Source: Podarcis muralis
Lineage: Eukaryota
DNA: 64,000 nt
Assembly: GCF_964188315.1 (NCBI RefSeq)
Contig: NC_135668.1
Location: 41,416,001 to 41,480,000 of the forward strand
Direction of reading: 5' to 3'
The position numbers and the translations under genes are program-made. The notes below the pieces were generated by a model that was not told the origin of the DNA, ran no database searches, and was given only the letters and a program-made list of their open reading frames with translations. This document shows, piece by piece, positions 41,366-53,884 of this stretch; the stretch's first letter is position 1; every line of letters starts with the position of its first letter.

Positions 41366-41576
41366 TCAAAACAAAAAAAATTCCTTCCAGTAGCACCTTA
41401 AAGACCAACTAAGTTAGTTCTTGGTATGAGCTTTCGTGTGCATGCACACTTCTTCAGATACATGCATGCACACGAAAGCTCATACCAAGAACTAACTTAG
41501 TTGGTCTTTAAGGTGCTACTGGAAGGAATTTTTTTTGTTTTGACTATGGCAGACCAACACGGCTACCCATCTGCAA
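41366..41576. mobile_element. Penelope-like palindromic insertion (PLE-1)
   Basis: 81-bp perfect inverted arms 41366-41446 / 41463-41543, 16-nt spacer, short unique tail, 10-bp TSD CTACTCTTCT (41356-41365, 41577-41586). Confidence 0.85.
41424..41461 (-). ncRNA. Minimal type I hammerhead ribozyme motif
   Basis: GUAU-CUGAAGA-A-GUGUGC AU GCACAC-GAAA-GC-UC-AUAC: helix I GUAU/AUAC, conserved core, helix II, palindromic AGCU in place of helix III. Confidence 0.8.
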
Positions 41577-42184
41577 CTACTCTTCTCCAGTGCATTTAGG
41601 GCAGCCAACCTAGTCTTGTCTCTTTCCACCCCACAAGAAAGACAAAGTGGTTGCTGGCCAGGGGATCCTTAGATGTTTAGAGCCGGGAGCTCATTTCTTA
41701 CATATCTGCCATCTTACCAGAAACCCAGCTCACCTAACGCACTTGATGGCTGACTGGTGCAAGAGGGAGCTGGTATAGAGGAGCGTCAGGTTCGAATCAA
41801 AGTACCCAACCCAAAAAGCAACACAAGTCTCGTGGCACCTTCAGAAGTACGAGATTAAGCTGAATGATAGTTGGTGCCCTTTGGGACTGGTGGTCCAGAA
41901 GGCAGGGAGACCAAAATCAATAGGATCCAAAGGCAATAAGAAGAGCTGCCAACTAATTCTGGTTTTCTCTCCAGCCTCCTCCACCTGCTGGATGAGTTGC
42001 TGAAATTCAGGAGGACTCAAAAGATCAAAAAGTTGAAAAACCACCAGTTTTTCAAGTCAGGATCTGATAAAATGATCCGTGGCTTAAGCTCCCTCAAAAT
42101 GCACTCAGGTGGTTTTTGCCTGTCTTCTTGATCAAGGTTTTGGTAACTGTGATCCTACCCTGTGATTGTTGTTTTCAGTTGTTT

Positions 42185-42345
42185 TGGGGAATCCTCACCT
42201 ACAGGTCAAATTTTTGGTGATTTTTTTCCTAGAATCCTAGCTCACATGCCACATTTTCGGTTATTTTTCAGGATTCTGACCTGCACATTATTTTTCAATC
42301 ATTTTTTTAATCCTGACCCATGTATCATATTTTTAGGCCATTGTT
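42185..42345. repeat. Four degenerate ~37-43-bp tandem units
   Basis: aatcct/gattct anchors at 42190, 42233, 42272, 42309, each followed by cac..ca..atttt..tttttc. Confidence 0.55.
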
Positions 42346-43821
42346 TCTCAAGCTACTTAATGTGGTGGACTGGCATTTTTAAAAAAACGACGACAACAAC
42401 AACAAACCAATGTGCCAGGGACTGGCGCCATATTTTGTCCCTGAAGCATCCCACCCAACCTTGGCTGTGGTGGAGTCTCTATGGACTGGCAGACAATGAA
42501 TCGTAGATCAGCCCTCATCTGCAAACAACTTTGATTTTCAGTCATTTTGGGGGATGCTGATCAGAATTTTGGTCATTCCAGTACAACTGAATAAAAGTAA
42601 AAATAGCTGAATTTCAATATCCACGCTTGTTGAAATGCAGAAGAGAGGAAAATGCAAATTCATTTGGGTTTTAGATCCATTCCTCTACCATTTCCGCCAT
42701 TTGGAATAAGAGATAGCACATCTCCTTTTCCCTTTGTACTGTGTTTCAAGAAAGAAGCGTATTTGCTATTGCCAGTCCCCTGCTCCATCCAAAAGTACTC
42801 AGAAATAGCCATAGGCTCGCTGCACCTAACTTGATGTCAATTTCCAAACCATGCTCATTTGCAAGATAGCATTTTCAAGACATTTTAGATGCCAGCAATA
42901 TTTGCATATTGCCTTTCCTTTGCTCGTTCCCGTGCCTTGCTTAAATGAGGAACAGAGGCGGAGATTAAACTGTGCCAAAGACAAAATGGAAATGCCAAAC
43001 CTCATTTGAACTCCAGGGAAGGTTCCGTGTTTAGTTCTTAAAACTGCACAACCCTAAATAAGGGTGCATAATAGAGAGGCCTGATGCGCTCTATGGGACT
43101 TGCTTCTGAGTAGAAGGCACATATTAACTCATTTGTTTTCCATTTTATGCATTTTCAACACAAGAATTCCATGAAGAAGTATGGCACACCAGTCCTATTA
43201 CTGAGCCAAGAATGAAGAAAATTTAAATTATGGGCCGTATGTCTTCAGTCACCAGTAATTTAACAGCCATGAGTTAAATTAAGAGAATGATTTTAAAGGA
43301 GAGGGGAAACAGACAGGGATTTCCTGTAGTAGGTACAGAATCCAGGGCAAATGAGCAAACTCTTTCAGGGTAGATACTTTGGTGAATGATTTATCTCTCT
43401 GGACAAGTCTAATCAAAATGGAGTAGAGCCATTTAATTAAAAGCTCAAATGAAGTATATATTTGAGAAAGGAAATTTATTAGCGATTCAGTGTAGGGACA
43501 GGCAAATTAGTCTGTCATTTTTGAATGTGTGCACCCAAAAGTTAGCTCCTCCCGTTTCCAGATTAATCTGACAATATATTTTTGTTCAATTGTGCACTTA
43601 AATATTATATGGCTGAGTTTTGCTTATTCCCTCCTCCCTTCCAAACCATTTTCCTTTTGTGTCACGGACGGAAGGTTGGGACCAAGCAACAAACATCTTC
43701 TCCCAAAGATGTCCCACAAGGCAGCATGGAGATTTTTCCTCAGGGTTTACTGCTGAAGGCTTTCTCAAAAATCAGTACAGCTTAAAGGCTTTAGGAACAG
43801 TGTTTGCTTCTCCTTCTTCTT

Positions 43822-44072
43822 CCCAGGTTGACAAAGCCCCAACTGCCCCTCACTTCCCTCTACAGCATGTGCAGAAACTGCCTTTTTGACCGTTGGATCC
43901 ACCATTTGTCTCATCTGCTCAATCCATCAGAGTCTGCCTTCACATGCAAGGGAAGTCCCTAACTCATGGAAGGACTGAGACCCATCGGCTACCCTCACCT
44001 GGTTTAGCCATCCATTTGAAGCTGTTTTGTGGTCCGTGGCTGCTGTCACACACTGACAGCTTCTAGGAGCCA
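43822..44072 (-). mobile_element. Non-autonomous RTE-related element, 5' part
   Basis: Homologous to 36890-37137, same 5' start gtggctcctagaagctgtcag. Confidence 0.5.
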
Positions 44073-45962
44073 CAGTTGCTCTAAACTACAGTAGTATTCT
44101 TCTGCTCAGGTCCATCTTGTGAGTTTCCTACACAAATCAGGTTGGCCATTGCAGCAACAGGATGCTGGACTAAATGGGCCATTGCCCTCATCCAGCAGGT
44201 CTCTTCTTATGGTAACATCATTTCAATTTTGATAGCCTCTCTATCTTCCCAGTAATGAAGACAGTACTAATAAGCATCTCTAACAAAACTGATATCAATT
44301 GCCTTCTAAGTGACACAAATACTACAATAAAATGCTTCAGGGAAGTGCAAAACGCAGAATTAAAACCATAAAAGGCTTTGTGCATCTGATGGACTGGGCC
44401 TTAGTTCCCAAATGACTGCACCATAATCCATTTGTTCACTCTTTAAGGTGGAACTCTGGGTTTTTTGCTCCTAGATGCAAAGCAAGAAATTCTGGAGGAT
44501 AATCAGTTGGGTGTTTTTAGGAGTCAGAAAGAGAGAATGGGACGAGGATGGGCAGTCAGCCAGAGGCTTTCCAAAAGCTTGAAGACTCAAGGGCAAGAAG
44601 ATACTCTGAAGGTAGCGGGCTGCGTTCCAACATAGGAGAGGCAGAGGGAGTGCGATAAGGAACAATAATAGGCATGACTGGCAACTCTACTGTAAAATTG
44701 GCCAACCGCACAATTCTTTCCATATTCATTAGAGGCGGATAAACATGAAGTCCTGTGATATGGATGCATCAAATGAATGAGATCTGGGAGTCCTTGGCTG
44801 GCCAACAAAATCCAACCCTTTTAAAAAATGGGCACAAATGGAGAAAAGGGTGGAGGATGACTTCAGTTTACCAACGTTCTGCAAGCACACAGTGTCTTCA
44901 CTGCTGATCATGAATATACAAAATAAGGCTCCCTGCAAAACTGGAAGCTGCAAATGTCCAAAGCAAAGAAAAGGGTAGTTGTCTGAATGGCTGTCAGCTA
45001 TTCAGAAAACCCCTATAGGATTACTTTTAAGACTTAATGAATTTGCCTCTATACAACACAAAGGGAAGATTTGCTTAATTTCGTTATCCACCACAACACA
45101 GCACTTCCGAAGTTATTGATTAGTGAGATTGCATCCAGCCTACATGGGGCAAGGCATTCTCTGTGGCAGCCACTAAACTGGAGAAACTCTCCTGCACTTT
45201 CAGATTTAAAGAGTTGGTTTCTTATTTAAAATATATTAAGTTCCTTATTTAAATTCTTTTATCCATTTTGAAACTTCTGTAAGCATGAACAGGGAATTTT
45301 AAGCGTCTCTCCCACTATCTGACGGTGGAAGCAAAATATGCATAAGCCCCAAGATTCACATATGCATCCCATAAACCTACAGTCTGCACAACAGATCACT
45401 GTGTGAACTGCTCTCAAGATATGTGGTTCTCATTACTTTAGCCTGTCTGTCCTGTCCTTTATACATCTGGTCAAAGCACTAATCTTTTGAGCACTGCATT
45501 AATGCCAATGTCTGTCCATACAGACAACCATTTGCCAGTGCACATAAGCAACTGCTCAGCATACAACACTGACTACTGATGGGCTTTTGTGCTCCGCTCC
45601 TTACTAGTAACGTCCTGCTCTCTTGTAACTGCTGTTGATGAATTTGGTTGATGGATTTACCAGCAATTGCCCCAAACTTCTAGAAACCAAGTCTCACACT
45701 TACTTCTGCGTTGTAGACTACTCTTCTGTTAATTTCTGGTGCATAGATATACGTGTGCATAGACATATGTGTTCAGTTTATCCTGTATAAAGCAGCACGA
45801 TCGAGAAGATAACCTGAGCCAGCAAAGGTGCCCGCACCTGAGGCTGTTGCTCACTTTACACAACAATGTAAAATTTACTATTACCTGAATAGCATTATAT
45901 ACTAGGGCAATGGAACAAGGATTGACTTTAACATGCAAGCCAAAAAGAGTCTATTTGAACAA

Positions 45963-53409: not shown

Positions 53410-53434
53410 CAGTGCAGCAATATGGCGGAAAAAG
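53410..53434 (-). other. RPS15A: RPS15A non-coding exon 1 with 5'TOP (TSS ~53434)
   Basis: CTTTTTCCGCCATATTGCTGCACTG|gtgagt; TCT initiator match; YY1 motif AATATGGCGG 53419-53428. Confidence 0.85.
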
Positions 53435-53508
53435 GAAGGCGGCCGGGCGAGCGCGGGGTGTTATGGGAAATCGAGGCGGCAGGATAACAAGGAAGTGGCG
53501 GGGGTTTC

Positions 53509-53518
53509 TCTCGCGAGA
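53509..53518. promoter_or_regulatory. TCTCGCGAGA (CGCG element) palindrome
   Basis: Exact motif ~75 bp upstream of the TSS; ETS site GGAAGTG at ~53491. Confidence 0.8.
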
Positions 53519-53624
53519 TTACCTTGTTCCCGGGTTAAAATGCCTCGGGGAGATTTACGCTCAGCCAGTGCTCGTCAACGGCTACGCTGTGGACCGTAGA
53601 GAACAAAATGTAGAGATATCTTGT

Positions 53625-53884
53625 CAAAACAAAAAAAATTCCTTCCAGTAGCACCTTAAAGACCAACTAAGTTAGTTCTTGGTATGAGCTTTCGTGTGCA
53701 TGCACACTTCTGCACACGAAAGCTCATACCAAGAACTAACTTAGTTGGTCTCGTATCTGAAGAAGTGTGCATGCACACGAAAGCTCATACCAAGAACTAA
53801 CTTAGTTGGTCTTTAAGGTGCTACTGGAAGGAATTTTTTTTGTTTTGACTATGGCAGACCAACACGGCTACCCATCTGTAACTG
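53625..53884. mobile_element. Penelope-like palindromic insertion (PLE-2) upstream of RPS15A
   Basis: 88-bp perfect arms 53623-53710 / 53762-53849, partial tandem copy in the spacer, 12-bp TSD GAGATATCTTGT (53613-53624, 53885-53896). Confidence 0.87.
53753..53790 (+). ncRNA. Minimal type I hammerhead ribozyme motif
   Basis: Identical to the 41424-41461 motif; core CTGAAGA 53757-53763, GAAA 53779-53782, predicted cleavage after C53786. Confidence 0.8.

What the first reader, a model, noticed from the sequence alone, without database searches (positions are those of the whole stretch)
41366..53884. Shared breakpoints define a ~132-nt hammerhead retro-unit that folds back at its own helix II
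Seen: the two insertions have different TSDs yet differ by one base in shared sequence. In both, the complete ribozyme starts exactly at GTATCTGAAG, the sense copy ends at ...CCATCTG(T/C)AACT, the inverted arm starts at the same (G)TCAAAAC site ~33-36 nt inside that end, and the internal junctions fall in or beside the GTGTGCATGCACAC palindrome. Inference: a recently active, ORF-less, SINE/retrozyme-like unit (53753-53884) mobilised by a Penelope RT, with helix II as template-switch point. This is my best candidate for an undescribed system, although its components are known.
Basis: partly seen in the sequence, partly recalled or inferred. Interest (0 to 1): 0.75.

Follow-up and report, generated by a model that had tools for sequence, protein, structure and literature searches.

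The report
Mirror-image Penelope leader insertions with hammerhead
Two young mirror-image insertions in a lizard genome are short, dead-end copies of the ribozyme-bearing start of a Penelope-like jumping gene, and their shared breakpoints match the published way these elements begin copying their RNA, so this is ordinary.

Summary
Both insertions (41366-41578; 53623-53884) have different target-site duplications and differ by one base. They share a 5' end at GTATCTGAAG, a distal end at ...CATCTG(T/C)AACT and an inverted-arm outer end 35 nt inside it.

Public lizard runs show the family is very abundant in at least two species. The 5' end recurs genome-wide. Many copies also end at unit 88-95.

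Inverted 5'-truncated partners, and a 30-40-nt "tail" at one end only, are published hallmarks of Penelope-like elements (PLEs). Frangieh 2024 showed that an Anolis PLE cuts and extends both DNA strands and starts reverse transcription at two internal RNA sites about 34 nt apart. The geometry here matches that.

The arms therefore look like two convergent target-primed cDNAs, not a fold-back at helix II. Genome-wide joints are not enriched in the helix-II palindrome.

I found no tandem units, no circle joints and no read ends at the ribozyme cut site. An internal T8 run argues against Pol III. No RT gene lies in the window.

Earlier notes of this scan reached the same reading on other DNA of this genome.

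In passing: RNA reads show strand-specific A-to-G changes, as in ADAR editing.

The parts
41356..41365 (.). ins1 left target-site duplication, CTACTCTTCT
   Evidence: repeated at 41577-41586
41366..41461 (-). ins1 inverted arm, unit 96->1. It carries the only complete minimal hammerhead of ins1 (minus strand, about 41461-41424). Its outer end is the tail-less (proximal) RT start site.
   Evidence: 96 nt, 100% match
41462..41462 (.). ins1 one-base filler (A) between the arms
41463..41578 (+). ins1 sense arm, unit 16->131. It is 5'-truncated inside helix II and keeps the 35-nt tail.
   Evidence: 116 nt, 1 mismatch at 41574
41577..41586 (.). ins1 right target-site duplication; it overlaps the last 2 nt of the arm
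53613..53624 (.). ins2 left target-site duplication, GAGATATCTTGT; its last 2 nt could equally belong to the arm
53623..53711 (-). ins2 inverted arm, unit 97/95->9. It is tail-less and lacks the CUGA box.
   Evidence: 89 nt exact
53711..53751 (+). ins2 middle sense fragment, unit 20->60. It starts in the second half of the helix-II palindrome.
   Evidence: 41 nt exact
53752..53752 (.). ins2 one-base filler (C) before the full unit
53753..53884 (+). ins2 full sense unit (1-132)
53753..53790 (+). Minimal type-I hammerhead motif: helix I GUAU/AUAC, CUGAAGA box, bulged A, helix II GUGUG-CAUG-CACAC, GAAA, palindromic AGCU. The predicted cut lies between 53786 and 53787.
   Evidence: read directly from the sequence. 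The minimum-free-energy fold gives helices I and II. The features match Cervera 2014. No Rfam hit.
53765..53778 (.). 14-nt perfect palindrome, which is helix II
53795..53807 (.). second palindrome, AACTAACTTAGTT (unit 43-55). Genome-wide joints cluster at its 3' edge (unit 54-57).
   Evidence: 5 of 46 ends, P 0.012, a post hoc test
53850..53883 (+). about 35-nt 'tail' between the proximal (unit 94-97) and distal (unit 129-131) RT start sites. It is AC-rich and holds an ATG at 53851 in a good Kozak context.
   Evidence: analogy with the 34-nt tail of the Anolis element
53885..53896 (.). ins2 right target-site duplication

Best explanation
Each locus is one integration event of a Penelope-like element (PLE) of the Penelope/Poseidon type. 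The steps below marked 'inferred' were not shown here.

1. The element's RT-endonuclease nicked both target strands 10-12 bp apart (inferred from the TSDs).
2. Each 3'-OH primed reverse transcription of the element's RNA leader at one of two fixed internal start sites about 35 nt apart. The distal site (unit 129-131, with the 'tail') was used on one side. The proximal site (unit 94-97, no tail) was used on the other.
3. The two cDNAs ran towards the RNA 5' end, which lies at GTATCTGAAG, probably the transcription start (inferred). They were joined in the middle by template jumps or end joining, leaving 0-1-nt fillers.

This gives a mirror-image insert whose outer ends are RT start sites and whose inner ends vary.

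The roughly 132-nt (or 96-nt) 'unit' is therefore the stretch from the RNA 5' end to the RT start site. Because initiation is internal, daughter copies lack the RNA 3' of the start site. That RNA is needed for RT use in the Anolis element, so the daughters are probably dead on arrival and come from longer master elements located elsewhere in the genome.

The hammerhead is a passenger. There is one complete motif per insert, it is of the dimer-requiring type, and in transcripts it is locked inside an 81-92-bp duplex.
For: - Architecture and coordinates.
- Published PLE hallmarks: an inverted 5'-truncated copy next to the element, and a 30-40-bp tail often present at one end only (Craig 2021).
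- The Anolis element PAc cleaves and extends both strands. It initiates at two internal sites bounding a roughly 34-nt tail at +85 to +119, that is 55 and 89 nt after the hammerhead cut at +30. Here the two ends lie 60-62 and 95-97 nt after the predicted cut, giving a tail of about 35 nt.
- PAc needs RNA up to +172, and hammerhead mutants still insert.
- Genome-wide: 11925 (X1) and 8720 (X3) contigs were laid on the unit. Loose ends follow 53840/41/46/47 with heterogeneous, AT-rich flanks. Loose ends precede 53754 with 0.4-0.5 agreement. Head-to-head 53753|53753 joints occur in all four runs, and many go-back joints land on 53753.
- The arms overlap (unit 16-96 is present twice) and have unequal inner ends (1 against 16; 9 against 20). 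This fits two primings rather than a symmetrical snap-back.
- CpG decay inside the ribozyme core (53778 C>T 17%, 53779 G>A 20% of X1 depth) shows no selection on the inserted ribozymes.
- Fold of ins1 RNA: -149 kcal/mol, z -25.8.
Against: - No RT/GIY-YIG gene is in the window, and I could not fetch a full-length element of this genome. The link between unit and master rests on analogy and on unchecked earlier notes.
- Poseidon_Ac of Anolis has no sequence similarity to this unit by eye. Its repeat also carries 126 nt upstream of the hammerhead, so a 5' end at helix I is not a published feature.
- The transcription-start reading of unit position 1 is untested. No pile-up of read starts was seen (table 6).
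- The reference used for read laying began and ended at the unit's edges. Its edge loose ends therefore show heterogeneous flanks, not exact ends.
- Both window copies carry TAA at 53798-800, in frame with the loop-II ATG. This would fit an ORF-less lineage if that ATG were the start codon.
Confidence: 0.7

Rival explanations
1. The unit is an independent, non-autonomous lineage derived from the leader or terminal repeat of a Penelope-like element (SINE- or retrozyme-like). It would be transcribed from its own copies and mobilised in trans by a Penelope RT.
For: - A discrete 5' end recurs genome-wide, and copy number is very high.
- Subfamilies exist. The window copies share 53798 T (a TAA in frame with the loop-II ATG), 53873 C, 53813 T and 53794 G, which are minority or co-major variants in X1.
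- Retrozyme families in frogs sit as sisters to the terminal repeats of Penelope-like elements, and monomeric copies exist (Li 2026 preprint).
- Non-autonomous PLEs are known in Chlamydomonas (Craig 2021).
Against: - No 131->1 go-back joint (tandem or circle) appears among the listed joints in DNA or RNA.
- No read ends fall at the cut site between 53786 and 53787.
- Sense and antisense RNA are about equal, as expected for passive transcription.
- A T8 run at unit 82-89 would stop Pol III before either RT start site, and no A/B boxes were seen on reading.
- By analogy with the Anolis element, the template must extend about 50 nt beyond the distal start site, which daughter copies lack.
- With 8 Ts the loop-II ATG frame is closed in most copies anyway, so the TAA may be irrelevant.
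Confidence: 0.2
2. The inverted arm is made by a single cDNA that folds back, or by the RT switching template at the helix-II palindrome. This would be snap-back or L1-like twin priming, rather than two target-primed syntheses.
For: - Two of the three junctions in the window lie in or next to the palindrome.
- Unit 19, the centre of the palindrome, recurs three times as a joint end, and unit 26 recurs twice (tables 5 and 5c).
- A second palindrome edge (unit 54-57) is also enriched (P 0.012). Hairpins may therefore influence where cDNAs stop or join.
Against: - The inverted arm's outer end is the family-wide tail-less terminus and abuts the TSD, so it is a start of synthesis, not an end.
- The arms are asymmetrical about the junction (inner ends 1 against 16; 9 against 20/21).
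- Both arms copy the same RNA region, unlike L1 twin priming.
- Genome-wide, joint ends in unit 13-26 number 6 of 46 against 4.9 expected (P 0.36). The commonest partner is unit 1.
Confidence: 0.1
3. The insertions are fold-back DNA transposons (MITEs) with terminal inverted repeats, or they are assembly artefacts.
For: They have inverted-repeat structure with flanking direct repeats.
Against: - TSD length varies (10 against 12 bp).
- The arms are unequal, with a 35-nt tail on one side only.
- The inner junctions differ between copies.
- The same junction types are seen in independent DNA contig sets and in raw RNA reads.
Confidence: 0.01

Closest known systems
Penelope/Poseidon-clade Penelope-like elements, especially Poseidon_Ac (PAc) of Anolis carolinensis (Frangieh et al. 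2024, PMC11167929; Craig et al. 2021, PMC8557442)
   Same: - A minimal hammerhead sits at the leader/ORF junction.
- There are two internal RT start sites bounding a tail of about 34-35 nt, at almost the same distance from the hammerhead cut site.
- The tail is present at one end only.
- An adjacent inverted 5'-truncated copy is present.
- Both-strand priming is implied.
- Insertions are flanked by TSDs.
   Different: - There is no detectable sequence similarity to Poseidon_Ac on reading.
- The copies here are extremely short (96 to 132 nt per arm).
- They have a sharp common 5' end at the first base of helix I, whereas PAc has 126 nt of repeat upstream of its hammerhead.
- The RT gene was not seen in this window.
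PLE minimal hammerheads (Cervera & de la Pena 2014, PMC4209133)
   Same: - CUGANGA and GAAA boxes are present.
- There is an extra base between positions 9 and 10.1.
- The G10.1-C11.1 pair is present.
- Helix III is a palindromic AGCU, the dimer type.
- Helix I is short (4 bp) and helix II is long.
- The motifs are widespread as single copies, or as pairs on opposite strands 100-700 bp apart.
   Different: Here the opposite-strand pairs are immediately head to head. Usually only one arm keeps a complete core. Self-cleavage was not tested.
Metazoan non-LTR retrozymes (Cervera & de la Pena 2020, PMC7229834; Li, Clavereau & Pollet 2026 preprint)
   Same: They are short, ORF-less, carry a type-I hammerhead, are related to the terminal repeats of Penelope-like elements, and are very abundant in some vertebrates.
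   Different: [quoted passage not shown] Here I found no tandem full units, no circle joints and no cleavage-site read ends. The ends are RT start sites, not ribozyme cut sites.
L1 5' inversions by twin priming
   Same: An inverted 5' segment lies inside a single TSD-flanked retrotransposition event.
   Different: In L1 the two segments are consecutive parts of one RNA. Here both arms copy the same region, and each arm begins at a specific internal start site.

Membership tests
PLE minimal hammerhead (min-HHR) | Catalytic boxes CUGANGA ... GAAA ... UH cut site | tested here: met
   Read directly at 53757-53763 (CUGAAGA), 53779-53782 (GAAA) and UC|A at 53785-87.
PLE minimal hammerhead (min-HHR) | [quoted passage not shown] | tested here: met
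   A at 53764; G53765-C53778; AGCU at 53782-85; helix I GUAU/AUAC (4 bp); helix II 5 bp plus a 4-nt loop. The minimum-free-energy fold reproduces helices I and II.
PLE minimal hammerhead (min-HHR) | Match to curated hammerhead covariance models | tested here: not met
   No Rfam hammerhead hit at gathering score or at E<=10. This is probably because the motif has almost no helix III (my inference).
PLE minimal hammerhead (min-HHR) | Self-cleavage | tested here: inconclusive
   No pile-up of read starts or ends at the cut site between 53786 and 53787 in two RNA runs (table 6). Frangieh 2024 saw the same for PAc.
Penelope-like element insertion | Inverted 5'-truncated copy adjacent to the sense copy, inside one TSD | tested here: met
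   the feature is described in Craig 2021.
Penelope-like element insertion | 30-40-bp tail, often at one end only, bounded by two RT start sites | tested here: met
   The sense arm ends at unit 129-132 and the inverted arm starts at unit 94-97 in both insertions. Many copies genome-wide end at unit 88-95. The PAc tail is about 34 nt.
Penelope-like element insertion | Encoded RT plus GIY-YIG endonuclease in the same family | not testable with these tools
   No such ORF in the window. No copy in the metagenome or prokaryote collections. Earlier scan notes report intact Penelope elements in this genome; I did not check them.
Penelope-like element insertion | AT-rich target preference | tested here: inconclusive
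   Consensus flanks genome-wide are AT-rich (table 7). The two window targets are pyrimidine-rich or mixed.
Metazoan non-LTR retrozyme | Head-to-tail tandem repeats of the unit | tested here: not met
   Neither window locus is tandem for full units. No unit-end to unit-start joint is among the listed joints in two DNA contig sets. Only the best-supported joints were listed.
Metazoan non-LTR retrozyme | Abundant linear and circular RNA of unit length, delimited by hammerhead cleavage | tested here: inconclusive
   No circle joint and no cut-site ends in two standard RNA-seq runs. Such libraries lose RNAs of about 130 nt.
SINE | Internal Pol III promoter and a transcript that reaches the 3' end used for priming | tested here: not met
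   No A/B boxes on reading. The T8 run at 53834-53841 lies upstream of both RT start sites.

The most novel reading that the evidence does not exclude
The roughly 132-nt unit is a self-sustaining, leader-only parasite of a lizard Penelope element. It would have its own transcription start at hammerhead helix I. The TAA-bearing subfamily seen here would have amplified to many thousands of copies without any coding master. Two palindromic hairpins (helix II and unit 43-55) would direct where the converging cDNAs stop and join.
Probability: 0.15. Interest if true: 0.45.

Novelty: new member of a known kind. Interest (0 to 1): 0.25.

Why it matters
The two loci are a clean natural readout of the unusual Penelope integration mechanism: both strands primed, and two internal RT start sites. 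The biochemical support for that mechanism comes from the one Anolis element. The same geometry in an unrelated-looking lacertid family suggests that it is conserved.

The sharp 5' end at helix I, and the possible role of hairpins in joining cDNAs, are small open points. The edited fold-backs may matter as a source of double-stranded RNA in lizard transcriptomes. None of this amounts to a new kind of system.

Tried and rejected
- **Rfam:** no hammerhead hit at gathering score or at E<=10. The only hits were spurious miRNA-hairpin matches to the inverted repeat.
- **Other copies or an RT partner in the window:** blastn of the unit found only the two loci. Ten of the 16 ORFs of 130 aa or more gave no Pfam family.
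- **Exact-pattern scans** of metagenome and prokaryotic genome collections for the hammerhead core: 0 hits in four scans. These collections hold no lizard DNA, so this says nothing.
- **Full-text search** for the core sequence: 0 papers. One query was malformed.
- **Comparison with Poseidon_Ac** from the paper's supplement was done by eye only. I did not paste that sequence into any tool, so no tblastn of the window with a PLE protein was run.
- **Rejected readings:** MITE or fold-back DNA transposon; L1-type twin priming; RNA cleaved by the hammerhead as the template (no recurrent breakpoint at unit 34/35); Pol III SINE.
- **Limits of the read laying:** the summed contig depths suggest roughly 1e4 to 1e5 copies, but the tool warns that depth is not a copy number. 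The reference edges coincide with the unit's edges, which limits what the edge loose ends can show.

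
Full report
**What is there**

The window holds exactly two loci of this family (blastn of the unit). I number the unit 53753-53884 as 1-132.

- ins1 consists of the reverse complement of unit 96->1 (41366-41461), one filler A, then sense unit 16->131 (41463-41578). It is flanked by CTACTCTTCT.
- ins2 consists of the reverse complement of unit 97->9 (53623-53711), sense 20->60 (53711-53751), one filler C, then sense 1->132. 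It is flanked by GAGATATCTTGT.

The shared parts differ at one base (41574 C / 53879 T), and the inverted arms are identical over 84 nt. One addition: ins2 has a third junction (unit 60 | C | unit 1) that is far from helix II.

**The ribozyme motif**

Read directly, 53753-53790 is GUAU-CUGAAGA-A-GUGUG/CAUG/CACAC-GAAA-GC-UC|AUAC. This shows all the features that Cervera and de la Pena (2014) list for the minimal hammerheads of Penelope-like elements:
- the catalytic boxes;
- the extra base between positions 9 and 10.1;
- the G10.1-C11.1 pair;
- a palindromic AGCU in place of helix III, which is the dimer-requiring type;
- a short helix I.

The minimum-free-energy fold of the unit reproduces helices I and II, although the unit as a whole is no more stable than shuffled sequence (z = 0.55). 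Rfam's hammerhead models do not match, even at E<=10.

Each insertion keeps only one complete core. In a transcript that core would be buried in an 81-92-bp perfect duplex (-149 kcal/mol, z = -25.8).

**Genome-wide behaviour**

I laid two sets of Logan contigs (coded organisms A and B) and two stranded RNA read sets of organism A on the bare unit.

- Abundance. 11925 and 8720 contigs touch the unit. Summed word depth is in the millions, against tens for single contigs. This is a rough sign of 1e4 to 1e5 copies in at least two species; the tool cautions that depth is not a copy number.
- Proximal 3' end. Loose ends follow 53840/41/46/47 (unit 88-95) with heterogeneous, AT-rich continuations.
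- 5' side. What lies before 53754 has only 0.4-0.5 agreement, so most copies have no conserved sequence upstream.
- Unit position 1 as a joint end. Perfect head-to-head 53753|53753 joints occur in all four runs. Many go-back joints land on 53753. Unit 1-3 accounts for 13 of 46 listed joint ends.
- Helix-II palindrome. Joint ends in unit 13-26 are not enriched (6 of 46 against 4.9 expected, P = 0.36).
- Second palindrome. The 3' edge of AACTAACTTAGTT (unit 43-55), at unit 54-57, is mildly enriched (5 of 46, P = 0.012, a post hoc test).
- What was absent. No unit-end to unit-start joint, no read pile-up at the predicted cut site, and no places where many molecules begin or end.

One caveat applies to all of this. 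The reference started and ended at the unit's edges, so the edge loose ends show heterogeneous flanks rather than exact termini. Only the best-supported joints were listed.

**How it most likely works**

The published description of PLE insertions already contains this picture: strong 5' truncation, an inverted 5'-truncated copy next to the element, and a 30-40-bp tail often present at one end only (Craig et al. 2021).

Frangieh et al. (2024) showed the following for the Anolis element PAc:
- the protein cleaves and extends both target strands;
- reverse transcription starts at two internal RNA sites that bound the roughly 34-nt tail (+85 to +119, with the hammerhead cut at +30);
- the template must reach +172;
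- hammerhead mutants insert normally.

Here the two termini lie 60-62 and 95-97 nt after the predicted cut, against 55 and 89 nt in PAc. The tail is about 35 nt.

In both window insertions the inverted arm's outer end is the tail-less start site and abuts the TSD. The arms overlap (unit 16-96 is present twice) and have unequal inner ends. I therefore infer two convergent target-primed cDNAs. One usually reaches the RNA 5' end at unit 1. They are joined with 0-1-nt fillers, and in ins2 with one extra template jump.

This is inference by analogy.

Because initiation is internal, the daughters lack the RNA 3' of the start site. By analogy they should be dead on arrival, which would make the 'unit' a product rather than a replicating lineage.

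**Against the SINE/retrozyme reading**

- No tandem or circular joints were found.
- Sense and antisense RNA are about equal.
- A T8 run inside the unit, upstream of both start sites, argues against Pol III.
- CpG decay of the ribozyme core in about a fifth of the depth at each of two sites shows no selection on the inserted ribozymes.

For the SINE/retrozyme reading:
- the sharp 5' end;
- the existence of subfamilies;
- the window copies carry TAA at 53798-800 in the loop-II ATG frame. That frame, however, is closed in most copies anyway (8 Ts lead to a TGA at 53846-48). The better candidate start codon is the ATG at 53851.

I could not obtain a full-length element. None is in the window and the public collections on hand hold no lizard DNA. 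This point therefore stays open, at roughly 0.2.

**Age**

One difference in about 200 shared nt, and 36% of X1 contigs at least 99% like the unit, point to recent activity. The C at 53873 carried by both window copies is about 28% of depth in organism A and about 0.3% in organism B. This subfamily therefore expanded in one lineage.

**Relation to earlier notes of this scan**

Notes on other pieces of this genome had already judged the same kind of palindromic insert to be head-to-head pairs of Penelope leaders. They also report intact Penelope elements. The scan has thus found this before on other DNA. My analysis agrees and adds two things: the mapping onto the two published RT start sites, and the genome-wide breakpoint table.

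**Verdict**

It is a textbook-grade example of known PLE integration products in a lacertid family that may not have been described individually. It is not a new system.

Noticed in passing
window 53780-53823 (unit 28-71), seen in RNA runs X23 and X24: Mismatches are strand-specific. A>G appears only in reads whose first mate lies on the minus strand (for example 53804: 97/352 and 120/281; 53815: 89/378 and 114/300). T>C appears only with the first mate on the plus strand (for example 53788: 50/386; 53798: 56/383). Each change is under 1% of DNA contig depth. This is the signature of ADAR A-to-I editing of both sense and antisense RNAs of the fold-back inserts. The most strongly edited As follow a U, and several precede a G. 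It needs matched DNA and RNA from one individual to confirm.
   Followed up: partly
window 49866-53440, minus strand: This is the ribosomal protein S15A gene. Coding exons lie inside ORFs 51078-51278 ([24 protein letters not shown]...) and 49866-50108 (...[27 protein letters not shown]) (the name is from my memory of the protein). A pyrimidine-tract first exon with a GTGAGT donor lies at about 53405-53440. ins2 therefore lies roughly 190-450 bp upstream of this promoter. A joint matching ins2's own junction (53758|53778) was seen in 3 RNA reads of X23.
   Followed up: partly
window 53778-53779: The CpG inside the hammerhead core (C11.1 and G12) shows C>T at 17% and G>A at 20% of genome-wide depth in X1. 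This is ordinary methylation decay. It shows that inserted ribozymes are not maintained by selection.
   Followed up: no
window 53798, 53794, 53813, 53873: Major subfamily variants genome-wide: T>A 57%, G>T 41%, T>C 56% and C>T 72% of X1 depth. The proportions differ in organism B; C>T at 53873 reaches 99.7% there.
   Followed up: no
window 25579-25708: A run of 130 N.
   Followed up: no
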